Source: Haliotis cracherodii
Taxonomy: Eukaryota
Assembly (NCBI RefSeq): GCF_022045235.1
Contig: NW_027266264.1
Coordinates: 15,004,001 to 15,068,000, forward strand
Length of the DNA: 64,000 nucleotides
Reading direction: 5' to 3'
Shown here: positions 3,236-52,539 of the stretch, piece by piece
Layout of the letters: every line of letters begins with the position of its first letter
Numbering within the stretch: the first letter of the stretch is position 1
Notes under the pieces: generated by a model
The model's input: the letters and a program-made list of their open reading frames with translations, nothing else
Databases searched by the model: none
Told to the model about the DNA's origin: nothing
Made by a program: the position numbers and the translations under genes

Positions 3236-3928
3236 GCCAGGGCTCGAGTTAAGGAATTTGATTTCACTTGGACCAGTTGCATGTTGACACGAAAAGCAAG
3301 TTGCGCCAAACAAAACCAAGTTGCACCCTGGTCCCATAAGTGTAGCAAAGTTGAACCCAGGCCAGTCTCGTGTCAGTGTCACATAAATTAATGACGTATT
3401 GCTGTAAAACGTAATCTTGAAGTACCCACATTTAGTTTTCATTGAGCATGACAAATTAACACAGGGGTCGATGGAGTTGGTCGTCGGACTGTATCATATT
3501 TCTGCTTGTGTTTGTTTGTTTGTTGTTTAAAGCAGCACTCGGCAATGTTGTACCTCTGAAGTTCCATGTTAGAATAATTTTTCAACAACCCATGCTTGCC
3601 GTAAAATGAGATAATGCTTGTAACAAAAAAACAACTGATCTAGATCTAGATCTTTCAAAATCATTTTCGATAATGCTTTTGTCGTTGTTATTTCTTCATT
3701 AATAGAAACGTTCATAGTATTGTAGTGTTTATGCTAGTTTTTTAATATTTGAAATTTTGATTTTACCACAGAATGCGATGTAGTCAGATTTTTATTTCTA
3801 CCTGCCTGTATACTTTGTTATGTGCATGTTGATTAAAGTAATTTCATGACACTGATTGGTTGATATGTAAATTTCGATGTACATACACAAATCCGTCTAT
3901 TTAGGTAATCTCCTGAGTACAATGAACA

Positions 3929-4799
3929 TTGGCTCACCTCAAACACCCATCCCGACGCACACATCCCCTTGGCTCACCACAAACACCCATCCCGACGCGC
4001 ACATCCCCTTGGCTATCCTCAAACACCCATCCCGACGCGCACATCCCCTTGGCTATCCTCAAACACCAATCCCGACGCGCACATCCCCTTTGCCCACCTC
4101 TAACACCTATCCCGACGCTCACATCCCCTTTACCCACCTCAAACACCCATCCCGACACCCACATCCCCTTTGCTCCCCTCAAACACCCATCCCGACGCGC
4201 ACATCCCCTTGGCTATCCTCAAACACCCATCCCGACGCGCACATCCCCTTTGCCCACCTCAAACACCTATCCCGACGCTCACATCCCCTTACCCACCTCA
4301 AACACCCATCCCGACGCTCACGCCCCCTTTGCTCCCCTCAAACACCCATCCCGACGCACATCCCCTTGGCTCACCTCAAACATCCATCCCGACGCTCATC
4401 CCCTTGGCTCACCTCAAACACCAATCCCGACGCACACATCCCCTCGGCTCCCCTCAAACACCCATCCCGACGCACACATCCCCTTGGCTCACCACAAACA
4501 CCCATCCCGACGCGCACATCCCCTTTGCCCACCTCAAACACCTATCCCGACGCTCACATCCCCTTACCCACCTCAAACACCCATCCCGACGCTCACGCCC
4601 CCTTTGCTCCCCTCAAACACCCATCCCGACGCACATCCCCTTGGCTCACCTCAAACATCCATCCCGACGCTCATCCCCTTGGCTCACCTCAAACACCAAT
4701 CCCGACGCACACATCCCCTCGGCTCCCCTCAAACACCCATCCCGACGCACACATCCCCTTTGCTCACCTCAAACACCCATCCCGACGCTCACATCCCCA
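3929..4799. repeat. ~40-bp C-rich minisatellite (~22 units) with a 275-bp higher-order repeat
   Basis: Unit ACATCCCCTTGGCTCACCTCAAACACCCATCCCGACGCGC. Diagnostic variants recur 275 bp apart (4319/4594, 4378/4653, 4440/4715). Confidence 0.95.
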
Positions 4800-4882
4800 T
4801 AAACGTAGCGCAAATACCTACTACATTAATCTGATCTCTACCTTCGTGACTTGTTTTTATTTCTCTTTTAACAACTTATTTT

Positions 4883-5040
4883 GTGAGTAAGTGAGTGTGG
4901 TTTTACGCCGTTGTCAACACTATTCCAGCAATAGCACGTCAGCAGAAATGGGCTTCACACAATGTACCCTTGTGAGGAATCAAAACCGGACCTTCGGTGT
5001 GACGAGAGAACGATTGAACCACCAGACTTACCCACTGTCC
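4883..5040 (-). mobile_element. tRNA-derived SINE (family B), degenerate
   Basis: Reverse complement matches the intact copy at 21507-21684 (GTGAGT tail, GGTTTTACGCCG, AATGGGCTTCACACA.TGTACCC). Confidence 0.8.
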
Positions 5041-6532
5041 TTTGTTGTCAAGGACATAATTATTCTTATGAGACCACCTCTGAGATTCCGGGGAAATAAT
5101 TACTAAAAAAGCGGGGAGATTTGTTACAACTTGTAACCTCGCTGATTGTGTGTCACTGTAATCCGACGGAGAGGATGGTTGGCGCCGTAGTTCTTCTGGT
5201 GACAGGGTAGGGCTGTGCTTTCCTAAAATATGCTATGATCCGGTGATCGTGGGTTTGAAATACAGATTTTTCACACCAGTACACTTGGGTTTCCCCAAAG
5301 TGGTAAACCTCTAGAACCTGTATTACATTGTTCCCGTCTCCAACACTAAGTCGACAGTGACGCCACACTGAGAAATAACTGAAATATTGTTCACAGTGGC
5401 GTAAATCCCAACTCCCTCATTCACTCCAGACTCAAGTATTTAAAGGCTGTAGTGATATAACTGTATAGTTGATCGCATGCATATGTATAACTCGTTCATG
5501 TGTGTCAATGCGACAGGTCCCTTACTGGGATTATGGGTCAGAATAGACCCTCAGCTCCCCATGGTAATCACAATAGTCGAAAATGAGGATCAGGTGATTA
5601 CAAAATGTTTCACCTGGCCGGTTGTGCGCCATCGTAACCCCCCGGCGTGGCTCTTGGCTCATGCTGTCAACCACTAGTTTGACTGTGACGTAAGCAACAA
5701 CACGTACAACTAAGTAAAATTCCTTTGTTGACACTAATTTGCCGAATATCAAAATAAAACTTGGCGCCCCCATTTCATTAGGGCTCGGTTTATACGACTC
5801 AAACTAGGTTAAATAACACCCTCAAATGGAAGGCTGTGTGTTGGAGTACCCGCCAGCCATGATAGATTAACGATAGTCATATGAAAACATCGGATATTCT
5901 TTAACATATTTTGAGTAGTATATATAGGCTATCATTGCTGAGTGCAGCTGAGACTCCAGAAAAATATTCAGCTGAGAAATAAGTAAAATTATACGTTATG
6001 ACATTTCACAACATTTTAATAACATGAACAAAAATACTTTCCTATTACAATAATAATGTTTCAATCAACCTAACCTGTATGTTTTAATTTTAAACACAGA
6101 TGATAAAAAACCTGTCAAAAACATAATATCTTGACACATATGCATCTGTGTTATCATAATCTCTAACTTATATGAAACACATATAAAAAGACGTTAGATA
6201 ATTTCGTTATGTCAAACAAGCGGAAACAAATTCGACGATCTTTGTATATAACATGATAGCACCTAGTTCAAATTTTTCACACACTCTGTACAGAAAGACA
6301 ATAACTTAATCAACCCCGTATATAATGGACAACATAAATCATATACTAGTATTTAATGTAACAAAAACCGTATATAATGGACAGCATATAAAATAGTAAC
6401 TATACCCGCAAATAATGGACAACATATACTTTCCATAGATTCTTCAGCATCTAAAATCATCTGTCATCAACAAGGATTTCATCAGTATCTAACTATATTC
6501 TGAAACGGGTAGTCAGCAAGGTGTGGAGTGTC

Positions 6533-9500
6533 TTATAAATACGCCACTCTTAACATCCTGTCGCCACCGTGGGTACAGGTGCTTGGCCTGCCTCCCCACG
6601 CCTTCATCACGGGTCTATTTGACCACTGTCCGTGTCCACAGCGGCTAGCAAATAGCTGTCTTTTTCTTTCCTTATGGAGGATTCGTTTCATCAGACACAG
6701 TCTCTTCATGTCATGAAAAGTGAGCTTAATAGGGGTTTGTGCCCCATTATCTTCAGGGCCGTCACAGGCGTGCTTCATCTGACAGGTCAATCCCACTTCA
6801 TCTTTTCCAGAGAAGGTGTTCACCCTCCTGCCAAACCCTCTAGGACAAGCCATTTGACGACCCAAGGATCTGCCCATGACGCGACGAATACTCTTCCTCT
6901 CATGATTTTTGCAGTTTGTGCTATTGTCTCCCATGATGAATTTGTCAGGGTTTGAAGCATAACATGATGTGACTTGATTGTTGATCGCCTCTGCCACAGG
7001 CTGGCTCATTCCAAAGTGGTTGTCACCTCGGTGACCTCCAAATCCATATATTCTTCCGCCTTTGGTTCCAGTTCCATGCAGATGAAGACGAAGACCACGG
7101 CGGCAGGTCTTCAAGACACGTCTTCTCCTGTGTCCGTGCATTCTTGGACATGGGTGTTTGTGAAATCTGTTAAGGCCTTGGAGGTATCGCAAGCGACGCA
7201 TGCGTCTTATAGTACGAGGACGATGAATTCTGAACGTTGGTCCTCTTCTGTGGCTCCTGCACATGTTGCCTCTCTGCATGACACAGCCCGCTTCATTGCA
7301 TTTTGGCATCACGTCATTCATTTGACCACGCCCCCCATACTTTCGGTTATTTCCAAGATACAAAGAAAGGGTCTTCCTGGGAAACCTGTTGAATTCAAAA
7401 TTTGAAGCTTCATCTTCCGAGGTTTCCCTGTTGGCTCTTCCCTCCATCGTCCTCCACTGGCGACGGATGCATCGTCTGATGTGAGGTTCGAATACTCTCT
7501 GCCATTTGTTTCCACGCGTTGTTTCCACTCTGACATTGCTGTTCTTATCGTGTGACTCCGAAACATCATCGCTAAACCTCACGCGACGTTTAGGACAACT
7601 CTCAAATCTATGGAGATTCTTTACGTCACTTTTGTTCAGACATCCAGGCATGTTTCCCGAGACACTCGTGCAACGAACACGACGACGCTGACAGCTGGCA
7701 AAGCTGCTATCAGCGCAGTGGCCATTGGGATAGCGTTCATCTTCAGTCTTATTATCTCGCTTGGACCATCTTCCAAAACAAGGCTCATTTCTACGACGCC
7801 ACCTTTTCCCACTGACCTCATGGTGGCCCATGGTGCGTCTCCCTGGTCCGTCTTGACCAGCTCGGTCACTACAGGATGCTTGAAATCCTCTGCAGCCAGC
7901 AAGGAAGGATTTCCTGGTCCCATGACATCCATAATCAGTACACTTGGCGTACCTTGAAGCTCGGCCTGCTTGCATTGATCTCCAATGTGGGTTGAAACAG
8001 AGATCGTCTTCTGTAGTATCACTACACTGATGCTCGAGTCCTGTCATCATCCGCCTTCTCCAAGGTCTTCCACATTTCCTGGTAGTTTCATCACGCTGGA
8101 GGTGACCATCTTTTTGTATCACCCGCCTTCTCCAACGTTGCCCACAGGAATTCAAAAGAGGCGCACCATCAATGGCATTCTCCTTCTGCAGGCAGGGACG
8201 TTCTTCTTGCATCACTCGCCTTCCCCTTCGTCCCCCACAATCGCTACCTGAAGACGTACTACCGCTTTCAGCCCCATCACGCTGACAGAGCCCGCCCAGT
8301 TCTCTCTGGCGTCGCCTCCCACAGACTCTCTTCGGGGTTACATGCTCCGTAGCTGTATCTTCATCAGCTGTAGGGTTTAACCTGTGCTGATGTCGACGAT
8401 GACGCCAGCCGGTCACAGTGCCAGATTCATCACCATTGTGCCCACAGGATGCTTGCAACTGCCATCGGCGACCATTTCTACAGATCTCTCGTCTGGATCC
8501 GCCTGCATCTGAAATATATAACATGTGACTGACTGTACACCTGAAGTCAGGAAAACAAGATGGCAGCCTACTTTAACAGGACAATTTGGAAAACATGTAT
8601 TATCCAATTTCAGACTTGTGATGTCATGTCTTTCTGCCTGGTAAGTTGACCACCGTTTTATCACCAGTAATATCAAATGCCATCGAAGATGACGTAGTTC
8701 ACCTATCATACAATTCTAATTTTGAAAATACACGTATAATATAAACTGCCACGTGACCAATATTAAGTTTGAAATCAATGAAACCGACAACAGAACACAT
8801 TTACAACTTCTTTTGTCATTTTACAATAATTGCCTATCAAACAATTCATTTTACAATAATTGCCTATCAAACAATTCATTTTACAATTATTGCCCATCAA
8901 ACATTTCATTTTACAATAATAGCCTATCTAACAATTCATTTTACAATAATTGTCTATCAAACAATTTATTTTACAATAATTGCCCATCAAACAATTCATT
9001 TTACAATAATTGCCTATCAAACAATTCATTTTACAATAATTGCCTATCAAACAATTCATTTTACAATAATTGCCTATCAAACAATCCATTTTACAATTAT
9101 TGCCTATCAAACAGTTCATTTTACAATAATTGCCTATCAAACAGTATTATTTTACAATAATTGCCTATCAAACAATTCATTTTACAATAATTGCCTATCA
9201 AACAACTCATATATATAATAATAATATACATAACTTGGGAGATGACTTACTGCTGTAGTTTCTCCTGACTTGTCCATCAACAAGGGATGTCATGGCATCG
9301 ACGTCGCCATCATCTTCCCGTCCCTGTTGTGGAATCTTCCTGGGCATTCTCATCAGACGTCTGAAGTGACGGGGTTGAACGTCCTTCGACAAAAAGAACG
9401 ACGTCTAGGATTAATTTTGAATAATAACTCTATATGACATAAAGGTTTTATTTCATATTGACATTATACGAAGTATATGTACAGAACGAAAGAGATCTTT

Positions 9501-10861
9501 AAAAGTATTTTCAGACCAGTTTATCGTTTTTTTAAGAGCATGCATCCAATGTCAAAGGGTTTACAGTTGAGCTTATTAAGCCAAGACAACATTTTTCTAA
9601 TATGGTATATAGTCATTAACTACAAACGAAATATCTGAACTTACCGTCTCCATCATTCTGTGTCCTCCAACGTCTGCTCTTTTCCCAAACACACGAGATC
9701 TGCGCCAAGTCTTAGCGTCAAGGGAGGTAACTCCTTCGGCTCTATTTGTCACGTCGTGCTCTGTTAGGCACAGAAACAAGTCTCAATACAGGGACACTAT
9801 TCAGGTCACACTGTGTACACTCTCGGTATGTGGCCCTGCGGAGACGGGCTGTTCGTTTTGCCGCTCACATAATCTATGCATTTATCTTATTCACCGTGAA
9901 GGCTCAGAGTCGAAGTCGCACACCGACATCATTTCATTGTTATTTGAAGACAAAGAGCTTTACAAAGAACCGGTTACAGTGATCGGTAAAACGAAGATTC
10001 CTTAGAAGCTATTAACTGTACACACTAGGAAATACATCATTCGATTTTGTGCTCTTTATGTCAATTGGAAATCAGCTCACCTCTGACGAAGATTTTCACA
10101 ACGGAATCATTGGCACTGCTGATGGCATCTTTGAGCTCTTCCTCTGAGGAGAAAGTGATTAAATCTCCATCTTCATCTGTTAAGGAAATACCATCATTAT
10201 GTTTATAAGCATGTACTACTGTCTCTTTAAACCATCATAAANNNNNNNNNNNNNNNNNNNNNNNNNNNNNNNNNNNNNNNNNNNNNNNNNNNNNNNNNNN
10301 NNNNNNNNNNNNNNNNNNNNNNNNNNNNNNNNNNNNNNNNNNNNNNNNNNNNNNNNNNNNNNNNNNNNNNNNNNNNNNNNNNNNNNNNNNNNNNNTGTTT
10401 TGATGTTTAAGAAAACAGTATATGCATGTTTTTATTGGCGAGGATTACAAAGCCATTCACAACGGTGTATTTAAACATTAAGTAGAAAATAATCCAATAT
10501 ATATTCATATCATTAAGTAATGACACGAAGAAGCACATCAAACCAAATGAAAAATGTTCAACAAACCATACCGGAAATATGTTAATTGGGTATATATTTT
10601 AAGAAATAATTCTCAATTTAGTCGTCAGTTTTCGAACTTAGTTCAACGACCACGTTGTATATTTATGTAATAAAGAGGAAAAAGTATACCTGTCCAGCAC
10701 AGTTTGAATGTGTCCGCATCAAGGTGTGGAAACACTTGCATCACCTTTTCGTTGATGAAGGTGTAACTAAGGGCGGCGTTATCGGGAACAGGGAAACGTC
10801 GGACCTCAGGAGTCGCGTTGCCCTGCCGCTCATAAATCATCTTTATTACCGAGGATTGCAT
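6533..10861 (-). CDS. PB1-domain (SQSTM1/p62-like N-terminus) protein with long Arg/Gly/Cys-rich tail, ~837 aa (gene A); coding exons 10861-10690, 10176-10081, 9760-9645, 9404-9251, 8508-6533
   Basis: Exon 1 encodes MQSSVIKMIY...EVRRF...FKLCWT and exon 2 encodes DEDGDLITFSSEEELKDAISSANDSVVKIFVR, a PB1 with OPCA motif (cf. p62 DEDGDLVAFSSDEEL...IFRIYIK). All introns are GT-AG with phases 1,1,0,1, joining into a 2514-nt open frame. No ZZ or UBA domain visible. Confidence 0.85.
8815..9207. repeat. 30-bp AT-rich minisatellite (~13 copies) in intron 4 of gene A
   Basis: Unit TCATTTTACAATAATTGCCTATCAAACAAT repeated head to tail. Confidence 0.95.
10242..10395. other. Assembly gap (N run) inside intron 1 of gene A
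   Basis: 154 N characters. Confidence 0.99.
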
Positions 10862-11118
10862 CTTGGGATTTCTCTGGACAGGATATGTCGTACAGCAGTG
10901 GGAGAACTGAAGGATTCTCACGTGTAGCAATCTGTATTCGCTATTTAGACCGGTCTTATTTCTTTAGCAGACGACAATTGAGTCTTTGTTCAGCAGCTGG
11001 CGTAGTAACTTCAGTATAGCTGTATAGAGCGTGCCGGCGGAGTGATTCTGTCAGTAAAACTAGGGGTTTATATACCAGGAAAATGAGTGATGTCAAGTAC
11101 TAATAATAGAATCAAACC

Positions 11119-11133
11119 GTTCTGGAACGTTCT
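11119..11133 (-). promoter_or_regulatory. Heat-shock element (three perfect inverted nGAAn units) upstream of gene A TATA
   Basis: GTTCT-GGAAC-GTTCT is the canonical HSF binding array, ~45 bp upstream of the minus-strand TATA. Confidence 0.8.
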
Positions 11134-11492
11134 CGTGACCGGTTTGGGGCCGTCCTAAACTATTTCAGACCGGTTGCGTCAGAATCACGGGACCCGGGTC
11201 GATTGATAAGGGCACGTGACGTGTAAGCTCCGTTCCGAATGGTTCTTGGGCCGGACTAGTTCACATTCCTTGGCTCTGAGCCAACACTCAACTTAAATCT
11301 ACATGCAGTTATATACACAGCTAAAGCCACATACATTTACGTTCAATAAATGCAAACGTTTGAAATAATGCTGGTGCGTCAACAGATTAATTGACACACG
11401 TTTAACTGTCCCAGATAATGTTTTAATTGCCATTTACAACAAAGCAGTTGTACATCACAACCGGTTGATTTACCTGGCACTCAGCCAATATT

Positions 11493-11502
11493 GTGACGTC
11501 AC
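11493..11502. promoter_or_regulatory. Palindromic CRE/ATF site
   Basis: GTGACGTCAC, next to a CCAAT box (~11485), within the bidirectional promoter. Confidence 0.5.
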
Positions 11503-11611
11503 TGTCGTTTTTGATGCGTAGGTGTTGCTGAAAGTCCTGTCCACGTGACCATGACTCGTCGAAGCTCGTGATCCTGATGCAACCGGTCTGAAACGTGCCA
11601 GCTCCGTTCTC

Positions 11612-11631
11612 GGAACGTTTTCGAACGTTCG
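11612..11631 (+). promoter_or_regulatory. Heat-shock element (four nGAAn units, one mismatch) upstream of gene B TATA
   Basis: GGAAC-GTTTT-CGAAC-GTTCG, ~33 bp upstream of TATAAAA at 11664. Confidence 0.75.
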
Positions 11632-11836
11632 ATTCTATTTCAAGAAATTACAACATACATCGGGTATAAAAGCCCGGGTTTGCGTTTGCTGACAGAATCA
11701 AGCGACTCTACTGCTACCTGCTGTCGTGAAAAGACAAAAAGAAGCCTATAGAAGTTCTATCGTCTGCTGCAAAGATATTTCACATTCAAACACCTGTTGA
11801 AACTTATCGTCACTGAGAATCAGCCCGAACAACACG

Positions 11837-14800
11837 ATGCAGTCTGTGGTTATCAAAGTGTTTTATGAGCGCGAGGGGAGAGGAAGACCCGTGGTCCGGC
11901 GTTTCCCTGGCCCTAAGGACGCCGCCCCTACATACACCTTCGTCCATGACAAGGTGACCCAGGTGTTCAAACACCTCGAGGCGGGGACATTCAACATGTA
12001 CTGGAAAGGTGAGTTTTTCTGTTTATTTGAATGTATTTATGTTTATGTTGTTCATAATAACAACATCTATCATTAAAGCGGACAGTATAGAGTTACTGAC
12101 CAACCCCTTGATTGATTCAGGGTAAGAATATAACCATAGGCAGCGTATGCTGGTCGTAAGAGGCAACTGAATGAATCGGGTGGTCGGGATCGATGACTTT
12201 ACTGATTGATTGTTATCATACCCCGACGGCGTAGAGCATTGCTCACAATAATGATCACTGGTTGTCTGGTCCAAACCCGGTTATGTACAGGCCGCCGCCA
12301 TAGCTGGAGTATTGCTGAGTGCGGCGTTAGATATCAAACAGTCACTGAACATGAATGTATTTATGAAGTATATCAGGGTTGGTTTCACTGTATTTCATTG
12401 AGTCTACACTGAACCATAATGCTTTGGGACGACTCATTGCGTTGGAAAACAACATTCACTCACATATTCAGTATAATGTTCAAAGCGATTGTTATTCCGG
12501 TATCCTAATGATAACTTTAAATGGTTCTTTGCGTGTCATGTACCCCTACGGAGTGGGGTGTTCATAATATCAATCACTTGTTAGTCTGATTTTTCACCGA
12601 CACCTTCATGTATCGGCAATATTGTTTCTACTGCGCCGTTAAACATTACTCACACACCCTCTGTTTCTTTCAAATAGACTTAAAGTCATGATTGATACAA
12701 AATAGTTCAAACATTCTCTCATAGTGTATATATTTTAAAAAAACATTTAATCGATATTTCATCAATAATTAGCATAACGAAAATGGGTTTGAAAATATGT
12801 GCGTAAATTATTCTGCCCAGGATTATCTCTTCAATGACGTAGATATACATGTTGGACGTATACGACAAAGCCCCGTTCATCTGCACGGTTCCATTCCTCG
12901 TGTTTTCGCCATTGTCGGATTAACAAGTCCATGAAGTTACCTTCTTTGAATATGTGTACTCATTCTAATCCCAAATCTTCCGGAATGCGTGTTTTCCAGA
13001 CTAACGGGGTTTAACTGTATAAAGCGTCAGACAATGTCTCAGTAAATATCATATCTGGGTAGTCAGTCGACCGTTTTATTTTAATTCTATTTTTAACCAT
13101 CTCACTTGTCTTTCGAGTTTGCGACAGTTGTCGCAGCATGTATGTGTAGTTTCTGTTCCTTATTCATGCTCAGAGTTCAAGTTCATTATAACAAGTAAGC
13201 TAACGTAAGCGAGCTATTGTTTCAGATGGTGAAGACGACTTTGTGACGTGCTCCACGGAACAGGAGATGGATGAGGCCCTCTGTTCCATCAAGGATTCCG
13301 TCCTCAGAATCTACATCCGAGGTACAAACGAACATTTTTCTGTTCAATATAAATATAATACACAGTCGTAATTTACTGCTGATGGCAATCGCAACCTGGG
13401 ATACATTCAACTGACCTTAATGTATTGATATTTAGGATCAACACATTTAACAGACTCGCTTGGACAAAGCGTATAAATGAATAACGTTTGTGTATGTAGA
13501 GATTGTATGGGGGCTTCAGCATCTCTTTATTCAGTACTACATGCCCCAGCTTTAACGTTGACTTTAACGGGGTTTTTTACTTTGATACTGTTGCCGAATG
13601 TGGTGATTGTGCTATTGTTGTTGTTAATGATGATAATGATCATGATGGGCATTAGTAATCCTTTGCAGAATGAGTCAGATGTATATTTTAAGATTCAAGT
13701 ACTTCCATGTCAAACTAATCTTTCGATGAATGATCTTTTTGCCAGATGTCTCTCCTGCCGTATCCGAGGAGGATGAATGGGACTTTGACCCCAGGATGCA
13801 GGGGTGGGGCCGAGGGTGGGGCAGGATGGGTGGCATGCGAAGTGCAGGCAGAATGGTGAGTTGCTATTAATCATGACTAATCCTTATTAATCATGACTAA
13901 TTATAAACATAAATCGAATGCCTCTCGAATAAACCCCTCGAAGTATCATTTTGACCGAAGACACCGCACCATCTTCTCTTGTACCTTTATTTATTCAACA
14001 TGCTCCCTTCCCACGGTATTTGATCAATTTACACACAATGTTGCAGCCAATGGAAGGAATGGCCCCTCCTCACTTTCTCCGATGGATGAAGCGCATGAAA
14101 CGCTGGAAGAAGAAGAATCAGTACCATGAGTCAAGGACTGAAGGGGAGGCCACTCCCGGTGAAGAGTCCGACAACACAGCAGATGGTGGCGCCCAAGCGG
14201 AAACTAGGAACGATGCACCTGAGGTCACAGAGGGCACATCCGATAGTAATGGTAGGTATCCTATCACACTCTCACTTACAACAACATACAATCACTAATG
14301 TCCACTTTACACAAACAAGTTGATCCATGTGTGTCTGTGGTCCGTCTCCTACAGTTGGAGGGACAAGGTAGACCGAGTGTGAAGTGATTGAGTGTGGGTT
14401 TTTTGCCACTTTGGTAAAGACAGTTATGTCACTACACCATAGCAAGAGACACCAACATGGGTGTTGTTCATTTTGCCCATTTAGTACCCAGTTCTTTGAC
14501 ACGGCGAGCAGTTGCTTTAACCAGTAGGCTATCCCACTGCCTCTTCCCTGTTTGTATATAACAGAGGTTGGCGAGATGATCGTGCACGTGTCCCCTGCAT
14601 GGGTCTTAGTACCATTGTCCGACGTCCGTTCACAGTAATGTTGACGGTCAGACAAATTAGTTCATCAGTGCTACATGGCTGTGGTCCAGTGAGCCATGTC
14701 TTCAGAATAATCGTTTCATTTAGTACTGACTTAAGGTTTTGTGTTACTCCCAATGGGTAGCGGCGGAGTAGGCTTGTGGGTTCAGGTACAGCATTCGCCC

Positions 14801-15550
14801 GTCAAACCCAAGTTCCCTGATTTCGTTCCCAACATGGGTCAAATGCCCAAAGCCCATTTCTGGTGTCACCCTCGTGATATTGCGTAAACCCATATACATG
14901 ATGGTTGTGTCTTCTACCTTGGCCTGTATTGTTTGACCGTGTTCTTGTACTTGTATTTGACAGATACAGAAATGAAGACAGATGGCCAAAGAGGAGCGAG
15001 AAAGTGTGGCAGAGGAAAGAAGGGAAGCCTAAAATGTCACAATCACGATCAACACCATGTTGAAGACCCCCAGACCAAAGAGGATGGTATCTTCGGATCC
15101 TCGGATGAGGAAATGCCTCCGCCAGTTCTCGGCTGCCCTGGTATGTTTGCAGGTGGCCCAATGCAGTTCTGGGGCATGATGGGAACGCATCCTTATGCGT
15201 GGGGTGAAGGCTGTAGGAAAAGAAGAGGATGGGGGAGGCGTGGTGGTCGTGGTGGTCGTGGAGGTTGCAAGAGGAGAGGGGAACACTTCAGTGAGATGTC
15301 ACCTTGGAACGACATGGGTTTTGCAGGATGGGAAGATGGACGAGGTGACCCTAGAGAGGGCGGCAGAGGTCGATTCGGGGGTCACCCTCGATGTGAAGGT
15401 CATGGTCAGGCACAGTGCCCTCGCAGACGTTGCCGCCGTCACAATGAGGCTGATGAGCCAATGGAAGCCTGCACAGAAGAAATGCGCAACGTCAAGGCCA
15501 CGGATGACATCATCACGCTTGATGATGAGGACGAGGCGCCCAAGATGTAG
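11837..15550 (+). CDS. PB1-domain (SQSTM1/p62-like N-terminus) protein with RGG-rich disordered region and C-terminal SIM-like motif, ~389 aa (gene B); coding exons 11837-12008, 13226-13321, 13746-13855, 14047-14251, 14964-15550
   Basis: Exon 1 MQSVVIKVFY...VVRRF...FNMYWK (172 nt) and exon 2 DGEDDFVTCSTEQEMDEALCSIKDSVLRIYIR (96 nt). Exon 1 and 2 sizes and all intron phases (1,1,0,1) equal gene A. 1170-nt open frame; AATAAA at 15948. Confidence 0.87.
12115..12340 (+). mobile_element. SINE (family A) in intron 1 of gene B
   Basis: GTCGTAAGAGGC.ACT...ATCGGGTGGTC...TGTCTGGTCCA...CCGCCATAGCTGGAGTATTGCTGAGTGCGGCGTTA, the reverse complement of the 24830 copy. Confidence 0.75.
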
Positions 15551-16019
15551 ACAGCTGATGCTTGAAAGAGACGGACATGTGCAGCATATTATTTGGTTGC
15601 AATTTGAATATCTAAGATCCTGTCATGAAGAACTACATTTATAATTCCTTGAATCAGACACGGACTACGAAAAGTCCATAGTTCAACATATTTTGTACAG
15701 GACATAGCTTATATTAAAATATTGATTCTGATGAATTTATCAGTGAGGCATAACAAAGTATTCTCATTATGTGTTGCTTGAACGTAAATGTACATATGAC
15801 CTCGATGTTGTCGCTATGGCAACAGTGCTGCAATATACTTTTTGTAAATACAATATTCATGGTTCCATTCAGTATTGTGTCATATATGTGCTTTTGCTGA
15901 TACTGTTATTTTGTTTATTATTTGAATTATTATTTTTCCAAGAGCTGAATAAAATGTGTTTATTTTAAAACATATACAATTCTTTTTACTTGTTCACCAC
16001 ACACATGGGGGGTTCATGC

Positions 16020-16180
16020 TGTGAGTGAGTTGTGTTTAACGCCGCTTTTAACAGTATTCCAGTTATATTGCGGCGTGTCAGCTTAATGTGAGAGGAAAGC
16101 CCGAAGTGATGCAGGTCTCAGACGTTTATCACTTCGGTAAAACCCACGAGCACGGGTATGGTGCTGACAAACCTAGAAAC
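16020..16180 (-). mobile_element. 5'-truncated SINE (family C)
   Basis: Near-identical to the tail half of the full copy at 22701-22981. Confidence 0.8.
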
Positions 16181-25075: not shown

Positions 25076-26986
25076 TTCCCTCGAGGAGTATCGGATACTC
25101 TAAGTTGCACATCCAGGTACTTCATGCATGATCCACGCACCAAATAATAACAGGACTGTAGCCCAATTCAGTTTGACAGTTTCTCTTAGCTTTTTCACAG
25201 TCTTCACAATATTCTCGGCCAAATAATGAATGAGTCATACATTAGGATATTTTCAGTTCCTTAATGGCATGCCTCGAAAAATAAGTCACGGGATCACGTC
25301 AATTATGGAAGAAGCTTTAAAAACTTAATGGGTGTGTGCATAATCTTTCATGGGTCCGTTATTTTTGACACAATGACTTTGTGTGTTAAACTTTAACATG
25401 AAGTTACCTGCATAAGAACAATGTAAAATATAATATAAATCTAAATTGGGAGAATGATGCTTTAAAACGCTATGCTTTACGATCTATATAAATACAATAC
25501 ATGCCATCTGCTTTCTCTAAGTATATTTTTTTTAAATATTTAAAAAACAGCAATTCATAATTGTTGTCACTTCATCGCGTCCATTCATTAAAAATGAATC
25601 GATCACGTCCGTTAAAAACATCAGCAGTTAAGTTGTGTGATTCATGAAGATTAGTGACTGTTTAAAGTCGAAACTTATCTTAGTGATGTTCATTGAGGCC
25701 AGCGACAACCCCGGCTACGAGAAGTCATCGCAGGATAGTCATAAGACCCCATAGAGCCATTTTCGTGAGTATTTGGAATCTATTACACTGGACTTGAAGA
25801 CATGTGGACCGTTACTTACTTGTGCATGCCAAACTGATTGTTGTATATGGCATTTACAAGCCTAAACGTATATTTACACATATCTATGTAGATATACATT
25901 ATATATAATTTTGTCAAAATTAACAACCTTGTAAATTTCAAAGGTAATACTAGGATATCTAGATAATTGTCTGACGATAAAAGAAAAGTGAGTTATACAC
26001 ATGCTGCTGCATAGCATCATTATATTTTCACGTGACTGTTTTTAATATAAAATATTTTGAATATGCTATGTCTGATATCGTGACATTATGACAATATGCA
26101 CAGTTTTAAATGTACACAGTACAATGCATGGCTTATTGTACCATTTTGACAACACTGGTAGTATTTGATGATAAAACATATTGTTATCAGACGGATGATT
26201 ATGCTTAACAATATTCTTGAAATTTAGAGTGTACAATAAGGAGTTACAGTGTTACAATAATGTTACGGTGTTGTAATTGTCGTGGATGGGAGCCCTCCAA
26301 ATCCGATGCGAAAATGAACACTTTCAGAGGGAAGTGAAGGTGAACTGCCTCACAAACACAATCGGCATCCTATTTGCCCACATCAGTACAGGAAACTGAA
26401 CTCAGAAGGTTGTGATAATCATTGGGAGGTTCTGGTTGATTTAATAGAATAGTTTCCAAAATAAAGATGGATTATAATCAGTTATGCTTCTGTAAATATA
26501 AGCGACAAACCTCATTCCATCATCATAGGAAATCTCTAGAGTCCATTCTACGACTATACATGTATAAATCAGCATGTTTATCAACCACTGCCTAACAGTG
26601 ATGATACCAGGTGTTCGCGAAAAGGGCAGCCTATCTTGGTGGTACATTTGCTGGACCACGCAATATACCTCTCATTATACCCCCTCTTGAAAAGAATCCA
26701 TAAATCCCTGATAATTGAACATATGTTTTCTTATCTTGGAAGTTCTAATAATCCAAAAAGAAATTACAATGTATAAAGTGCTTGGTGAAATAGCCTATTA
26801 CCTTTCTATAGGGATGTCCAAGCAAGAGTAGCATTCTAGTTATCACAACAAGTGTCTGGATAAGTGGGGTTCGACTGTACATACTAAAAGTAGTTTTGCT
26901 CTGATCGACACAAACCATTAGTCTATACATTTTCACATTACTTACGGCAGCAAAACATTCCTTGTTTGTAATTTCAGACTGTGAAA

Positions 26987-28264
26987 ATGGGATTGATGGG
27001 TTTTCGGTTACTGTTGGCAATGCTAACAACAGCTGCAGTTGCTGACGCATATCAACCAAAAGGGAAGGGTTATAGCATTCCACGGGTTCACCCAAAGGGA
27101 TCACATCCAGTTCACCCGAAAGGAAATATCGTCGCACCCGATACTCCTGACTTGAAAGAGCCTTTACTTCCTCAACTTCCACTGTATTTAAACCCAAAGG
27201 GTTCATTTCTCCATGACCGCAGACGTTTAACACCTGTGAACCCGAAAGGAGCTATATTACCTTCAAGACCCTACTTTCCACGTAACGATCTGCGAGGGTC
27301 CTACTTTCCTGCGGCCCCTAAAGGTCAGCTAGAACCACACACTTCATTAGGATTACATCAACCCTTAAATCCTAAAGGTTCACTAGCTCAGCCGACACAA
27401 CCCTTAAATCCTAAAGGTTCACTAGCTCAGCCGACACAACCCTTAAATCCTAAAGGTTCACTAGCTCAGCCGACACAACCCTTGCATCCAAAAGGTACCC
27501 TAGACATGCCGAAATGGAAACAAACTTCATCGACACAGATGAAAAAGTCCTACTCTGCAGAATACAAAAAAGAAACTTGGAACAAAAAGAAAGAAACAAA
27601 TACTGTTTACCCCAATTATCCCTCTGACCCATCGGCCAACAAGCCAACCGTTTCTCCTTGGGACAAGAAGAAGGAAACACACCCTTCCAACCAACACAAT
27701 TCATGGGTCAATAGCAAAACTAACCCCACCAAATCCAATCAACAAACAAATGAACCTTCTGGACAAGTGAAGGATCTTAATAGCCAAGATCAACGTCAAA
27801 ACCCATCTGTAGAACGTGTTAACCCGACTAACCATGGTCAACAAGGAAACAGTATTGATACAATTGGACAAAACACAAACAACCAAGACCAAGGTCTGCC
27901 GCCAAGTCAACCTGGAAGTTGGCAACAGACAAACCCATCCACCAATAACCAGTTCCCTCGTGACACGTGGCAAGTGGTAGACCCATCAACTCAAGGCCAA
28001 AATCCATCTGACCCTTGGCAGACACAAGGTCAGCCTCAAAATCCATCTGACCCTTGGCAGACACAAAACCAACCTGACACGTGGCAAGTGGTAGACCCAA
28101 CAACCCATGGCCAAAATCCATCTGACCCTTGGCAGACACAAGGGCAACCTGACCCATGGCAAGGGGTAGACCCATCAACCCAAGGTCGGCCTCAAAATCC
28201 ATCTGACCCTTGGTCACCAAGTGGTTACCAACAGACCAAATCACCCAATGCAATAGCTGGTTAA
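26987..28264 (+). CDS. Secreted Cys-free Pro/Gln-rich repetitive protein X1 (PKG repeats, C-terminal NPSDPW repeats), 425 aa, single coding exon
   Basis: Splice acceptor TTTCAG at 26977, then ATG at 26987. Signal peptide MGLMGFRLLLAMLTTAAVADA, ten PKG motifs, 39-bp tandem unit QPLNPKGSLAQPT, five DPW motifs. 3'-UTR intron 28297-28488, AATAAA at 28692, conserved paralogue at 46266. Confidence 0.88.
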   Translation: MGLMGFRLLLAMLTTAAVADAYQPKGKGYSIPRVHPKGSHPVHPKGNIVAPDTPDLKEPLLPQLPLYLNPKGSFLHDRRRLTPVNPKGAILPSRPYFPRNDLRGSYFPAAPKGQLEPHTSLGLHQPLNPKGSLAQPTQPLNPKGSLAQPTQPLNPKGSLAQPTQPLHPKGTLDMPKWKQTSSTQMKKSYSAEYKKETWNKKKETNTVYPNYPSDPSANKPTVSPWDKKKETHPSNQHNSWVNSKTNPTKSNQQTNEPSGQVKDLNSQDQRQNPSVERVNPTNHGQQGNSIDTIGQNTNNQDQGLPPSQPGSWQQTNPSTNNQFPRDTWQVVDPSTQGQNPSDPWQTQGQPQNPSDPWQTQNQPDTWQVVDPTTHGQNPSDPWQTQGQPDPWQGVDPSTQGRPQNPSDPWSPSGYQQTKSPNAIAG

Positions 28265-31322: not shown

Positions 31323-31915
31323 CAATCTCATTAAAATCAGATCTTAGTTCTCACTATCGCGAAACAAAGATCTGAGGACATCCCATTACGGGTCACGTCA
31401 AAACGACGTTTCATTCGACCATTCAAAGCGTCGCTTACCAGATCATGAAAGTGACAGTCGGAATGTGTTTCTGATCATGCAACCTCGAAAATGTCAACAC
31501 AGGGTATTCCGAACGACAGCAACGGCCCGTACGACTGATTCCGTCAAAATGATCGTCTATCTCTTGCTTCCGTGGGATTTGAACGGAGGAGGCGTTGCAG
31601 AGTACGTGGGAAGCACTGCCATAACAACAATCTCAACAATATATTAGTCATTCCGGAATGTTCGTTTGTTCGGTTTTCAAAATTATAATCGAGAACTGTG
31701 TCAACATATTTTTCAAGCGTAGTCTTAAATGGAAGTTAATTGAAACGAGTGCCGTAAAGCTCGAGAAAGCTGCTTTCTATTTGGCTGATGTCGACTTCCT
31801 ATCAGTCATTTCAGTGGTCTGTCAAAGTTCGCGAAAGGTCGTTCTGACGTGACCCGTATTTGGATGTCCTCAGATCTTTGTTTAGCGGCAGAGAGAACTG
31901 ATTTTAATGAGATTG
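31323..31915. mobile_element. Non-autonomous DNA element (MITE) with ~85-bp terminal inverted repeats and ~10-bp TSD
   Basis: CAATCTCATTAAAATCAG...AAACAAAGATCTGAGGACATCC..TACGGGTCACGTCA is inverted at 31830-31915; flanks are TAGAACACGT and TAGAACATGT. Confidence 0.8.
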
Positions 31916-32068: not shown

Positions 32069-33490
32069 TACTGAACCGCAAAAGAAACGTCACCCCAAGT
32101 AACATTGCATGAAAAGTTGTCATTTAAATATCTGGGTAATTTTTGTCAAAGTTTCTAAAATTTATTATTACCTTGTCCAGAAAAATGAAATTTTATGAAA
32201 AAACCCCAAAGTAGATGACAAAAAAACGATCGCCCAAACGCATTACGGCAACGGCCATGGTAACCCGTGCAAATTGAAATGCACATCCGTTCCCCCATTT
32301 CTTGCCCTATAAAATCCACCCAGATCGGATAACATTCATTCGTTATGGAATTGCTACCACATGCCAAGATTGACAAGAAATCAGCGACACCAAGCCCTTG
32401 GACGATTGCAAGCTGGACAAACCACCCGGCAAGTAGCCAATGCATTTCAAGTCCACGTAAGGACCATATACAGGCTCCAGCAACGGTACCAGACCACCAA
32501 CACTACAGATGACCGAACACGTAGTAGAAGACCCAGGGTCACCACCCGACGTCAGGATCGTAAGATTGTGCGACAGCATCTTCAAGATCGCTTTGTTACT
32601 GCTGTGGAAACTGCTCGACAGACCATTGGGACCCACCAGCGACACATTAGTGCGGACACTGTGCGTCGACGATTGACGAGCAGACACCTCCACCTCTCAC
32701 ACCACGTCATCGCCGGGACCGTATTCAGTGGGCAACACAACACCAGCAATGCATATGGCGCCACCAGCAGTGGAGAAGAAGAGTCTCAACAGTAGATGGC
32801 AGAGAGAGAGTCTGGAGACGCCGTGGAGAAACACTATTCGCATGCTTGTGTAGTTGAGAGAGACTCGTGGGGTGGTCCGAGCATCATGGTGTGGGGTGGA
32901 ATTGGTCTTGCACAGAGGGTCGGCCCTGTGGTCTTCCAGAACATTAGTCCAGGGGGAGGTAATGGTGTCACAGTAGCTCAGTACATTGATCAAGTCTTGA
33001 GACCAAACGCCATACCTCATTTGGCACGTCGCAACCACGAGTTTCAGCATGATAACGCCCATGCCCACACTGCGAGAGCCACAAGAGACTTCCTCCAGCG
33101 GAATGGCATCAGAACCATGCAGTGGCCTGCCCTCAGTCCCGATTTAAATCCCACTGAGCACCTGTGGGACGAGATTCAAAGACGGCTGAATGACGTCCGA
33201 CCAAAGCCAACACCTACAGCTGAACTGCGTCAGGCGTTCCTCAGAGTGTGGGCTCAAGTGCCTATGGCCATCATCAACCGCCTCATCCATTCAATGTATT
33301 GACGTTGCACTGCAGTCATCAATGCACATGGCGGACACACGAGATACTGGCTTGTGATGCCATTTTCTCAGGGACTAATGTTTTGTTTCACTTTAAGAAC
33401 ATATGACACTTTAATTTCAACCTTGATAATCAGTTTCATCGTTTTACTTTGTCTCAAAGTATGTTTACAGTGTTTGGACAAATAAGGTTT

Positions 33491-46200: not shown

Positions 46201-46265
46201 TCTATAAATTTTAACATTATGTACGACAACAAACCATTCCTTGTTTGTAATTTCAGTTCGTGAAA

Positions 46266-51873: not shown

Positions 51874-52539
51874 TATATTAAATGATTGGTTAAATATGCT
51901 TCAGAACTATTTGAAAAGTATGGATGAAATTACATATTATAGTCCTCTCCATTTTACATAGAACACGAAATAACGCGATTATTGAACAAGTCATTCCGGC
52001 TCTAAGGAAGACTTACTTACAGTAATGACAAATCTTGCACAGTGCGTGTTCAAGTAATATCCATTTTGCTGGTAATAAACATCATCATACAATTTGGATC
52101 TCGTGGGTACAATCCGAGTACGGTCAAAAGCGCTTTTAATACTATATGTGCATGTTTTTCCTATAATTCGTGCTAGTACGTACAACGCGTATGTGTGTGT
52201 GTGCGTGCGTATTTTTGCCTTTTCTTAGGTTGTATTTGCGTAAGATGTAAATTATGTAGTAAACGTGTTTTCACATTTCAGAAATGCTAATGCACCTTCT
52301 CAATATTTTAAACTACCTAATTTATAGCCCACGAAGTACAGAGTCCATCCCAGTTTAGAGGATGTTGGGGTGACTGGATAGGGATGTTTCAGAAGACTGT
52401 GTTGCATTATCTTTCTTCGTTTTTAAATTAATTGTTCACACCATTCCAAAACAATCGATATTGGTACCAAATTCAGGTGTATTTAAAATAGCTTTCCCAA
52501 TTAATATGGTATTTGTACATTTCTTTAATTTCAGCCGAG

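What the first reader, a model, noticed from the sequence alone, without database searches (positions are those of the whole stretch)
6533..15550. Head-to-head pair of stress-promoter-driven, p62-derived PB1 genes that swapped ZZ/UBA for cationic disordered tails
Seen: two intact 5-exon genes invisible to the ORF track, with identical exon-1 (172 nt) and exon-2 (96 nt) sizes and phases 1,1,0,1, divergently transcribed from one 975-bp region. Known: the PB1 matches SQSTM1/p62 (K7, RRF, DxDGD..FSSDEEL, RIYI), and as I recall human SQSTM1 splits PB1 at the same phase-1 position with a 96-nt second exon. PB1 drives p62 filament and condensate formation. Neither gene has the ZZ finger, a canonical LIR or the UBA. 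Inference: an inverted duplication of a truncated p62 produced a heat-inducible two-component scaffold that could co-polymerise (with each other and with real p62) and display new RNA-, SUMO- or PP1-binding tails. This would be a candidate lineage-specific proteotoxic-stress system.
Basis: partly seen in the sequence, partly recalled or inferred. Interest (0 to 1): 0.88.

Follow-up and report, generated by a model that had tools for sequence, protein, structure and literature searches.

The report
Abalone p62-derived PB1 gene pair
Two real, spliced, back-to-back abalone genes are stripped-down copies of the autophagy receptor p62: they keep its self-assembling PB1 domain but have lost its zinc finger, LC3 motif and ubiquitin-binding domain, and whether heat switches them on is still untested.

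Summary
The window (Haliotis cracherodii, C1:15.004-15.068 Mb) carries two divergent 5-exon genes. Gene A is on the minus strand (830-837 aa). Gene B is on the plus strand (389 aa). Their first exons are 172 and 96 nt and the intron phases are 1,1,0,1. Both match RefSeq 'uncharacterized protein' models, and spliced RNA-type contigs show all four gene-B junctions.

They derive from SQSTM1/p62:
- The best solved-structure and database relatives are all sequestosome-1.
- Gene B aligns collinearly with abalone SQSTM1 across a gap that is exactly the ZZ finger.
- The canonical SQSTM1 genes of this genome share the intron positions and phases.

ZZ, UBA and a canonical LIR are absent. The assembly gap lies in intron 1 of gene A and hides no exon.

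- B's Arg/Gly/Cys block is inherited from molluscan p62, and B's tail is not net cationic. Only A's 738-aa tail (+82) is new.
- The pair is itself duplicated as an inverted ~12-kb segment. That gives four genes plus one fragment.
- The family was found only in Haliotis.

A conserved HSE, E-box and ATF-like promoter supports stress control. Induction and co-polymerisation with p62 remain untested. This is a new variant of a known family, of moderate interest.

The parts
10690..10861 (-). Gene A exon 1 (172 nt, ATG at 10861; first part of the PB1 domain with K7 and R21-R22)
   Evidence: An RNA-type contig ends exactly at 10690 and runs on elsewhere.
10081..10176 (-). Gene A exon 2 (96 nt, phase 1 to 1; acidic OPCA part of PB1, DEDGD..SSEEEL)
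   Evidence: (PF00564 26.6 bits on this exon alone).
9645..9760 (-). Gene A exon 3 (116 nt; the counterpart of the canonical ZZ exon, but without a ZZ)
9251..9383 (-). Gene A exon 4 with the RefSeq acceptor. An alternative acceptor at 9404 adds 7 aa. The exon holds the degenerate post-ZZ motif PRHFRRLMR.
6533..8508 (-). Gene A exon 5 (1976 nt; about 657-aa Arg/Gly/Cys-rich polycationic tail with 3-5 C..(R/P)WRRR repeats; stop at 6533-6535)
10242..10395 (.). Assembly gap inside intron 1 of gene A (not filled)
10862..11836 (.). Shared 975-nt divergent promoter made of two homologous mirror-image halves
11120..11132 (.). A-side heat-shock element (three perfect alternating nGAAn units), about 45 nt upstream of the A-side TATA (11068-11075, minus strand)
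11613..11630 (.). B-side heat-shock element (four alternating units, one TTT for TTC), about 35 nt upstream of the B-side TATA (11665-11671)
11163..11189 (.). A-side arm of a 27-nt inverted repeat (93% complementary). It contains an ATF/C-EBP-like TGACGCAAC.
   Evidence: I1; one search shows it nearly invariant in all four promoters.
11567..11593 (.). B-side arm of the same 27-nt block (TGATGCAAC)
11542..11549 (.). B-side E-box CACGTGAC. The A-side counterpart is at 11213-11219.
11837..12008 (+). Gene B exon 1 (172 nt; PB1 first part; 59% identical to A exon 1)
13226..13321 (+). Gene B exon 2 (96 nt; PB1 second part)
13746..13855 (+). Gene B exon 3 (110 nt). It is the ZZ exon with the ZZ deleted, and it ends with the same 9 nt as canonical exon 3.
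14047..14251 (+). Gene B exon 4 (205 nt; conserved post-ZZ motif PPHFLRWMKRMKRW followed by an acidic linker)
14964..15550 (+). Gene B exon 5 (587 nt; Arg/Gly/Cys block and an acidic C-terminus ..DDIITLDDEDE..; stop at 15548-15550)
3653..16026 (.). Window arm of an inverted segmental duplication. Its partner is C1:14979629-14990893, which holds the second pair B'/A'.

Best explanation
Identity. These are two expressed paralogues of SQSTM1/p62, found so far only in the genus Haliotis.

Proposed history:
1. A DNA-level duplicate of a molluscan SQSTM1 gene kept exons 1-5 with their intron positions.
2. It lost the ZZ finger by an internal deletion in exon 3, and it lost the UBA exon and the LIR.
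3. It was then duplicated head-to-head together with its promoter, giving A and B.
4. A's last exon grew into a roughly 660-aa polycationic Arg/Cys/Gly-rich tail. B kept the ancestral p62 linker: the PPHF.RWMKR motif, an acidic stretch and an Arg/Gly/Cys block.
5. Later the whole 12-kb unit was duplicated again in inverted orientation.

Proposed mechanism (inferred). Both proteins keep a two-faced (type AB) PB1 domain, so they can self-assemble and join p62-type PB1 polymers. They cannot bind ubiquitin through a UBA or LC3 through a canonical LIR. They would therefore act as modifiers or alternative scaffolds of p62-like assemblies, not as autophagy receptors. A would add polyanion or RNA binding. 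Each promoter has an HSE next to its TATA box, plus an E-box and an ATF/C-EBP-like site. That points to induction by proteotoxic or integrated stress.

My confidence by step: identity and origin about 0.95; PB1-driven assembly about 0.6; stress induction about 0.55.
For: Gene models and expression:
- Models verified exon by exon and identical to RefSeq proteins.
- Spliced contigs cover all four B introns and the A exon-1 donor.

p62 origin:
- PB1 is above the Pfam cut-off and is the only domain found.
- The nine best PDB matches are sequestosome-1 (E 7e-7). NBR1 and MAP2K5 come next at E 0.17-0.2.
- In the representative search, only the A and B clusters lack ZZ and UBA among the top hits. The next eight hits carry PB1+ZZ+UBA_5, apart from two unnamed transcript-derived proteins.
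- B against H. asinina SQSTM1 gives one alignment, 3-177 against 2-213, E 8e-28, with a 41-aa gap at the ZZ. hhalign gives probability 99.9 over columns 3-212.
- Canonical SQSTM1 genes of this genome have a 96-nt exon 2, phases 1,1,0,1 and exon 3 ending GGCAGAATG|gt, as in B. Their UBA sits on a sixth exon.
- A and B form one clade (SH-aLRT 99) and are homologous through residue 141.

Constraint:
- K7, R21, R22 and the acidic D58/D60(E60)/D62 are invariant in five A-type and five B-type proteins.
- Orthologues exist in H. rufescens, H. rubra and H. asinina.
- Between the two pairs, dN/dS is 0.2-0.3 in the PB1 exons and 0.48-0.58 in the long tail exons.

Promoter:
- The promoters of A, B, A' and B' align. 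Islands of identity fall at the E-box, the 27-nt block, the HSE, the TATA box and the start region.
- Sequestosome-1 is reported as induced together with HSPs in stressed snails and mussels (PMC4599737).
Against: - No expression data under heat or any other stress could be examined. One perfect HSE in 64 kb is not significant by count (2 found, 0.87 expected).
- Short islands of promoter identity could partly reflect gene conversion between nearby inverted copies.
- The PB1-only tree does not resolve which SQSTM1 lineage is the sister group (support 76 or lower).
- The PB1-PB1 complex prediction gave no verdict.
- Tail dN/dS of 0.5-0.95 shows weak constraint. AF2 gives pLDDT under 50 for both tails, from only five sequences.
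- The laid spliced contigs are 95-98% identical to the window, so some may come from the paralogue B' or from a sister species.
Confidence: 0.6

Rival explanations
1. Decaying duplicates. A and B are transcribed but functionless remnants of SQSTM1 copies that are on the way to becoming pseudogenes.
For: - Three defining p62 modules have been lost.
- The tails evolve fast: 56-58% identity for A and 69% for B against H. asinina.
- dN/dS is 0.95 in B exon 4.
- A truncated, frameshifted A-tail fragment lies at C1:15.854 Mb. A' carries an earlier stop.
Against: - Open frames of 389 and about 830 codons are kept in four species, including the distant H. asinina.
- PB1 dN/dS is 0.2-0.3 and the interface residues are invariant.
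- The tails hold many invariant motifs.
- Promoter elements and splice sites are conserved, and spliced transcripts exist.
Confidence: 0.07
2. Same genes, different job. The PB1 domain serves only as an oligomerisation handle for a nucleic-acid-binding or protamine-like Arg/Cys-rich protein (A) and an RGG protein (B). They would work in RNA granules, chromatin or reproduction, independently of p62 and autophagy.
For: - A's tail has pI 10.9, net charge +82, 16% Arg and 5% Cys, and carries repeated C..(R/P)WRRR units whose number varies between species.
- It evolves rapidly, as many abalone reproductive proteins do (my own knowledge, not tested).
- Nothing beyond PB1 matches SQSTM1 in A.
- No relatives were found for the tail.
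Against: - The PB1 keeps both p62-type faces.
- B keeps about 210 collinear p62 residues.
- The promoter layout (E-box, HSE, TATA) resembles that of canonical SQSTM1 copy 3.
- No tissue data were available to show germline expression.
Confidence: 0.2
3. The PB1 domains come from another PB1 family (NBR1, TFG, MAP2K5, aPKC or Par6) and only resemble p62 by convergence.
For: The PB1-only tree leaves the sister group unresolved, and the A/B stem branch is long at 0.48.
Against: - All top hits are sequestosome-1, while NBR1 and MAP2K5 reach only E 0.17-0.2.
- Four intron positions and phases, a collinear post-ZZ motif and the exon-3 end are shared with canonical SQSTM1.
Confidence: 0.02

Closest known systems
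SQSTM1/p62 (sequestosome-1), in particular the three canonical H. cracherodii genes on C78 (53.615, 53.628 and 13.609 Mb) and the H. asinina and H. rubra 'sequestosome-1-like' proteins
   Same: - Type AB PB1 domain with K7/R21/R22 and an acidic OPCA motif.
- Identical positions and phases of introns 1-4.
- The post-ZZ PPHF.RWMKR motif (clear in B, degenerate in A).
- An acidic linker and an Arg/Gly/Cys-rich block (in B).
- A promoter with an E-box and an HSE-like element upstream of the TATA box (copy 3).
   Different: - No ZZ finger: an internal deletion in exon 3.
- No LIR of the EWTLL type.
- No UBA exon.
- A has a roughly 660-aa polycationic last exon with no relatives.
- Faster evolution: PB1 is 78-82% identical between H. 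cracherodii and H. asinina, against 85-91% for the two PB1 exons of the canonical copy 3.
- By definition these cannot be ubiquitin-LC3 receptors.
NBR1
   Same: A PB1-containing partner of p62. It shows that PB1 proteins can join or cap p62 polymers.
   Different: NBR1's PB1 lacks one of the two faces (my own knowledge). Sequence similarity here is marginal (E 0.17). NBR1 has ZZ, FW and UBA domains, and A and B have none of them.
Other p62 architecture variants seen here (P0011: PB1 without ZZ but with a weak UBA; P0014/P0159: PB1+ZZ without UBA, ending ..KIILDDNK)
   Same: They show that loss of single p62 modules recurs in invertebrate transcriptomes. The C-terminus of P0014 resembles B's ..DDIITLDDEDE.. 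ending.
   Different: Their organisms are unknown (assembled transcripts only). Neither lacks both ZZ and UBA, and neither clusters with A or B beyond the PB1 domain.

Membership tests
PB1 domain (Pfam PF00564) | Profile score above the curated cut-off (23.6 bits) | tested here: met
   A-type proteins score 40.6-45.9 bits. The B-type protein P0006 scores 27.0 bits. Gene A exon 2 alone scores 26.6-30.8 bits. Gene B's exons scanned singly give no hit, so B's membership rests on P0006, the paralogue B' (92% identical), and on its homology to A.
PB1 domain (Pfam PF00564) | Beta-grasp order of secondary structure (beta-beta-alpha-beta-beta-alpha-beta) | tested here: met
   AF2 models of A and B give E-E-H-E-E-H-E over residues 4-90 with pLDDT about 55-73. 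Confidence is moderate and no fold search was run.
Type AB (two-faced) PB1, as in p62 | A basic face (K7, R21, R22) and an acidic OPCA motif (D-x-D-G-D ... E-E) in the same domain | tested here: met
   These residues are invariant in five A-type and five B-type proteins. The roles of the residues come from established p62 PB1 structural work (my own knowledge).
Type AB (two-faced) PB1, as in p62 | Actual homo- or hetero-oligomerisation | tested here: inconclusive
   Complex prediction for A-PB1 with B-PB1 gave no verdict. Biochemistry is needed.
SQSTM1/p62 gene family (descent) | Closest relatives by sequence are SQSTM1 proteins | tested here: met
SQSTM1/p62 gene family (descent) | Shared intron positions and phases with canonical SQSTM1 of the same genome | tested here: met
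   Exon 1 ends at the same codon position in phase 1. Exon 2 is 96 nt. Exon 3 ends ..GRM in phase 0 and exon 4 ends in phase 1.
SQSTM1/p62 as a selective autophagy receptor (function) | ZZ zinc finger (PF00569) | tested here: not met
   No ZZ in the A-type proteins P0001-5 or the B-type protein P0006. No ZZ hit within C1:14.97-15.07 Mb in the whole-genome six-frame search. The alignment gap falls exactly at the ZZ.
SQSTM1/p62 as a selective autophagy receptor (function) | C-terminal UBA (PF16577) | tested here: not met
   The genome has only three UBA_5 hits and all are at the canonical C78 loci. None is in the A or B proteins. A possible degenerate remnant (..MGF.GW..) appears in one MAFFT alignment but is not supported by hhalign.
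SQSTM1/p62 as a selective autophagy receptor (function) | LIR core [W/F/Y]xx[L/I/V] preceded by acidic residues | tested here: not met
   A pattern scan finds none in B's tail and none with an acidic lead-in in A. Canonical abalone p62 has CEGEWTLLS. Non-canonical LIRs cannot be excluded.
HSF-regulated (heat-shock) genes | At least three contiguous alternating nGAAn units close to the core promoter | tested here: met
   A has a perfect trimer at 11120-11132. B has four units with one mismatch at 11613-11630. Both lie 35-45 nt upstream of the TATA box and both are kept in A' and B' with one change.
HSF-regulated (heat-shock) genes | Transcript induction on heat shock, and HSF binding | not testable with these tools
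   The available runs are coded contigs without conditions. No paper names these loci.

The most novel reading that the evidence does not exclude
Abalones have evolved a stress-induced set of 'receptor-dead' p62 paralogues that co-polymerise with canonical p62 through their two-faced PB1 domains. A's +82 polycationic tail would link the polymer to RNA or other polyanions. B's block-charged RGG tail with its acidic, SIM-like C-terminus would tune valency. Together they would rewire p62 condensates during heat or proteotoxic stress. That would be a natural experiment in tuning p62 filament composition that no model organism offers.
Probability: 0.2. Interest if true: 0.7.

Novelty: new variant of a known kind. 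Interest (0 to 1): 0.45.

Why it matters
Polymerisation of p62 through its PB1 domain underlies filament and condensate formation in selective autophagy. How cells tune polymer composition is an open question, studied mostly with engineered truncations. Here nature has made and kept, across a whole genus, PB1-only derivatives of p62 with new tails, under promoters that look stress-responsive.

If they do join p62 polymers, they offer natural dominant modifiers for testing how valency for ubiquitin, LC3 and RNA shapes p62 bodies. They are also candidate thermal-stress markers for abalones, which are of conservation and aquaculture concern.

If they do not, they remain a clean, well-dated example of domain loss and tail gain after gene duplication. 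They also give a functional label to genes that four RefSeq annotations call 'uncharacterized'.

Tried and rejected
- Single-exon Pfam scans of gene B's PB1 exons gave nothing. Its PB1 reaches the cut-off only on the full-length B-type protein (P0006).
Joined sequences came only from database proteins returned by the tools (P0001, P0156 and others).
Orthologue DNA, synteny in other species and cross-species dN/dS could not be obtained. Paralogue pairs within this genome were used instead. The exon A4 figure there is an alignment artefact and is discarded.
- Complex prediction for A-PB1 with B-PB1 gave no verdict (score 0.09). It counts neither for nor against binding.
- The PB1-only tree of 161 proteins left the sister group of A+B unresolved.
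- hhalign of A-type against SQSTM1 found nothing beyond the PB1 domain. A suggested UBA remnant in B, seen in MAFFT, was not confirmed.
- The protein atlas gave no usable hits for either tail.
- Paper searches for the LOC identifiers found nothing. Searches for abalone plus sequestosome plus heat found nothing specific.
- A words search of earlier findings found nothing.
- HSE counts in the window are not above chance. The case rests on position and conservation.
- The gap was not filled and no letters were taken from other copies. Only the collinearity of its flanks was checked.

Full report
**What is there.** The window is C1:15004001-15068000 of a 1.18-Gb genome in 80 contigs. The proteins it encodes are filed under Haliotis cracherodii, the black abalone.

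I rebuilt both gene models exon by exon.
- Gene B (plus strand): 11837-12008, 13226-13321, 13746-13855, 14047-14251 and 14964-15550, giving 389 codons plus a stop.
- Gene A (minus strand): 10861-10690, 10176-10081, 9760-9645, 9404-9251 and 8508-6533.

Every junction is GT/AG. Exons 1 and 2 are 172 and 96 nt in both genes, and the phases are 1,1,0,1. The two ATGs are 975 nt apart.

The database tools returned the joined products themselves.
- P0156 (XP_071098125.1, 389 aa) is identical to my gene B model.
- P0001 (830 aa) is gene A with an exon-4 acceptor 21 nt further in, at 9383. The orthologues favour that acceptor.
- Both are named 'uncharacterized protein'.

**The gap.** N 10242-10395 lies wholly within intron 1 of gene A (10177-10689), so no reading frame crosses it. 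The flanks on both sides align collinearly and in the same orientation with the paralogous copy of this segment. None of the five A-type proteins has extra residues between exons 1 and 2. I neither filled the gap nor read letters for it.

**Transcription.** No run is on record as RNA for this stretch. Seventeen small runs guessed to be RNA hold 7-17% of its words, which is close to the exon share.

Laying four runs gave the following.
- Two runs (X18, X20) behave as genomic DNA of a relative.
- Two runs (X1, X3; different organism codes and studies) carry contigs with GT..AG joints at 12008|13226, 13321|13746, 13855|14047 and 14251|14964. These are all four gene-B introns exactly as modelled.
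- An X1 contig covers 11004-10690 on the minus strand, stops at the exon-1 donor of gene A and continues for 477 nt that lie outside the laid stretch.

The contigs are 95-98% identical to the window. Some may therefore come from the paralogue or a sister species. They establish splicing of this gene type, not its expression level or its inducibility.

**What the proteins are.** Pfam finds only PB1. A-type proteins score 40.6-45.9 bits and the B-type protein P0006 scores 27.0 bits, against a cut-off of 23.6.

Against all solved structures, the nine best matches are sequestosome-1 PB1 domains (E 7e-7 to 2e-4). NBR1 and MAP2K5 follow at E 0.17-0.2.

An exhaustive HMMER search of 1.84 billion representatives gave the following.
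- One A-type cluster and one B-type cluster.
- After them, of the eight next-best hits scanned, six carry PB1+ZZ+UBA_5 (those looked up are named sequestosome-1-like: Haliotis, Gigantopelta, Pecten); the other two are the variant transcripts P0011 and P0014 listed under 'Noticed in passing'.

Gene B aligns with H. asinina SQSTM1 in a single collinear BLASTP alignment: 3-177 against 2-213, E 8e-28. Its 41-residue gap is the ZZ finger. Profile-profile comparison of the B family with eleven molluscan SQSTM1 proteins gives probability 99.9 (E 8e-32) over B columns 3-212.

The motif after the ZZ, GRM-P..PPHF.RWMKR.M.RW, is shared by molluscan SQSTM1 proteins and B, and by A in degenerate form. A matches SQSTM1 only in the PB1 domain, but it matches B through residue 141.

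**Gene structure as a test of descent.** The genome has three canonical SQSTM1 genes, each with PB1, ZZ and UBA_5 hits in order: C78:53.615-53.620 Mb, C78:53.628-53.633 Mb and C78:13.603-13.610 Mb.

In the two that I dissected:
- exon 1 ends at ..YWK/FWK plus one base (phase 1);
- exon 2 is 96 nt (phase 1);
- exon 3, the ZZ exon, ends ..GRM with the same nine bases as gene B exon 3 (phase 0);
- exon 4 ends in phase 1;
- the UBA sits on a sixth exon.

So A and B are DNA-level duplicates of an SQSTM1 gene. They lost the ZZ by deletion inside exon 3, and they lost the UBA exon. No ZZ or UBA_5 match lies anywhere near the window in the whole-genome six-frame searches. A pattern scan finds no LIR core in B's tail and none with an acidic lead-in in A, whereas canonical abalone p62 has CEGEWTLLS.

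**Order of events.** In a PB1 tree of 161 proteins, the five A-type and five B-type proteins form one clade (SH-aLRT 99). It is nested among ZZ+UBA proteins on a long stem, and its sister group is unresolved. Both types lack ZZ and UBA and share exons 3 and 4. The simplest reading is truncation first, then a head-to-head duplication that included the promoter.

The pair exists in H. rufescens, H. rubra and H. asinina. In H. rubra the two genes have consecutive LOC numbers on one contig. Nothing like the tails was found outside Haliotis.

The pair is itself duplicated.
- B' (minus strand, C1:14980052-14983763) and A' (plus strand, C1:14984738-14989043) form a second head-to-head pair.
- Window 3653-16026 is one arm of an inverted segmental duplication, 82-90% identical to its partner, with a spacer of about 16.8 kb.
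- The A-type tree puts the H. rufescens protein with A' (100/99). This duplication therefore seems to predate the split of those species. The B-type tree disagrees weakly (84/87), which may reflect unsampled copies or gene conversion.
- A frameshifted fragment holding only the A tail lies at C1:15854067-15856089.

**Constraint.** Between the two pairs dS is about 0.06-0.14. dN/dS is as follows.

| Region | dN/dS |
|---|---|
| PB1 exons | 0.20-0.30 |
| A last exon | 0.58 |
| B last exon | 0.48 |
| B exon 4 | 0.95 |

Counts are small for the short exons.

Identity between H. cracherodii and H. asinina is as follows.

| Protein | PB1 | Last-exon tail |
|---|---|---|
| A | 78% | 56% |
| B | 82% | 69% |

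Open frames of about 830 and 389 codons are kept in all four species. A's tail has many invariant islands, and 3-5 C..(R/P)WRRR repeats whose number varies between species.

**The tails.** A's 738-residue tail has pI 10.9, net charge +82, 16% Arg, 11% Gly and 5% Cys.

B's tail is net -4 and is built of blocks: basic 93-150, acidic 150-250, Arg/Gly/Cys-rich 250-355 (R 18%, G 27%, C 6%) and an acidic C-terminus. The make-up of the third block is the same as residues 237-300 of canonical abalone SQSTM1 (R 17%, G 27%, C 6%).

B therefore did not swap in a cationic tail. It kept the ancestral linker. Only A's tail is new.

AF2, with five sequences each, gives a PB1-like fold at pLDDT 55-73. pLDDT is below 50 for both tails, with a few basic helices. 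This is compatible with disorder but is weak evidence.

**The promoter.** The intergenic region is made of two mirror-image halves (inverted repeats I1 and I3-I6). When the four promoters (A, B, A', B') are aligned in the direction of transcription, identity concentrates in the following blocks.
- A CCAAT-like palindrome.
- An E-box, CACGTGAC or CACGTCAC.
- A 27-nt block containing TGATGCAAC or TGACGCAAC.
- A heat-shock element. A's is a perfect trimer at 11120-11132. B's has four units with one mismatch at 11613-11630.
- The TATA box, 35-45 nt downstream of the HSE.
- The start-site motif CTGACAGAATCA.

The 27-nt block resembles C/EBP-ATF composite sites. That resemblance is recalled from memory and was not tested. 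Contig ends place the 5' UTRs at 11004 or beyond for A and at 11695 or before for B.

Canonical SQSTM1 copy 3 has a similar order of E-box, HSE-like element, CCAAT and TATA. The stress-type promoter may therefore be inherited too.

By count alone the HSE is not significant (2 found, 0.87 expected). The argument rests on position and conservation, and gene conversion is an alternative for part of it. Sequestosome-1 is reported as up-regulated together with HSPs in stressed Biomphalaria and Mytilus (PMC4599737). Canonical mollusc SQSTM1 has PB1, ZZ and UBA (PMC7595595). No paper names these abalone loci.

**Mechanism.**

Shown:
- p62-derived, spliced, conserved genes;
- the PB1 domain retained, with K7, R21, R22 and the acidic motif invariant;
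- no ZZ, no UBA and no canonical LIR.

Inferred:
- The proteins oligomerise through PB1 and can enter p62-type polymers.
- They cannot act as ubiquitin-LC3 receptors. They would therefore modify or re-purpose such assemblies.
- A would add polyanion or RNA binding. B would add an RGG block and an acidic, SIM-like end.
- Expression rises under proteotoxic stress.

The complex prediction gave no verdict.

**Verdict.** The evolutionary interpretation is largely supported, with the corrections above. The functional interpretation remains a reasonable but untested hypothesis. This is a new architectural variant of a known family. It is already present as unnamed gene models in four RefSeq annotations, and it is of moderate interest.

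**Earlier notes.** Notes s1-826270 (mirror-symmetric promoter) and s1-826462 (B's RGG and SIM-like end) were made on this same window. Both agree with what I found. The second needs the correction that the RGG block is ancestral.

Noticed in passing
G000 C1:14979629-14990893 (outside the window; loci L041 and L046): A second head-to-head pair (B' on the minus strand, A' on the plus strand). It forms the other arm of an inverted segmental duplication of about 12 kb, 82-90% identical, with a spacer of about 16.8 kb. A' has an earlier stop than A.
   Followed up: yes
G000 C1:15854067-15856089 (locus L045): A third copy, truncated to the last exon of the A type plus part of the intron-4 minisatellite. 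It has a frameshift and a TGA, no PB1 exons lie nearby, and it is closer to A' (91%) than to A (87.5%). It is probably a pseudogene fragment.
   Followed up: partly
window 8816-9222: A 30-nt minisatellite (13.5 copies, 92% matches) in intron 4 of gene A. It produces spurious ORFs of 135-149 aa and is also present in both paralogous copies.
   Followed up: partly
window 3929-4798: A 40-nt minisatellite (22 copies; higher-order period 275) with a strong GC skew. It produces spurious overlapping ORFs of 210-337 aa and lies inside the duplicated arm.
   Followed up: no
window 12140-12590 and 14750-14923: Stretches in gene B introns 1 and 4 with contig depths of 10^4 to 10^5 and many rearranged joints in all four runs. 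These are high-copy interspersed repeats.
   Followed up: no
window 26981-28264 (+) and 46260-47117 (+): Two paralogous ORFs (427 and 285 aa) with near-identical signal-peptide-like starts and Pro/Gln/Asn-rich repeats (..NPKGS.., ..NPSDPWQTQ..). They may be secreted low-complexity proteins.
   Followed up: no
window 52513-55062 (+) and 62349-63629 (+): A long open frame of 849 aa (Pro/Ser/Thr/Gln-rich, with a signal-like start) and a 426-aa ORF made of units of about 37 aa (..NIRNSISDLINPRRRQSRPSQPP..). Both sit in regions of strong negative GC skew.
   Followed up: no
window 32361-33302 (+); also 31651-31663: Two adjacent ORFs (144 and 168 aa) that look like a split Tc1/mariner-type transposase. 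The only other perfect HSE trimer of the window lies about 700 nt upstream of them.
   Followed up: no
G000 C78:53615434-53620264, C78:53628190-53633141 and C78:13603264-13609788: Three canonical SQSTM1 genes (PB1+ZZ+UBA_5), two of them in tandem. The second tandem copy is much diverged (exon 1 is 35% identical to A's).
   Followed up: partly
proteins P0011, P0014 and P0159 (assembled transcripts, organisms unknown): Other p62 architecture variants. One has PB1 without ZZ but with a weak UBA. Another has PB1+ZZ without UBA and ends ..EEIRQATEKIILDDNK, which resembles gene B's C-terminus.
   Followed up: partly
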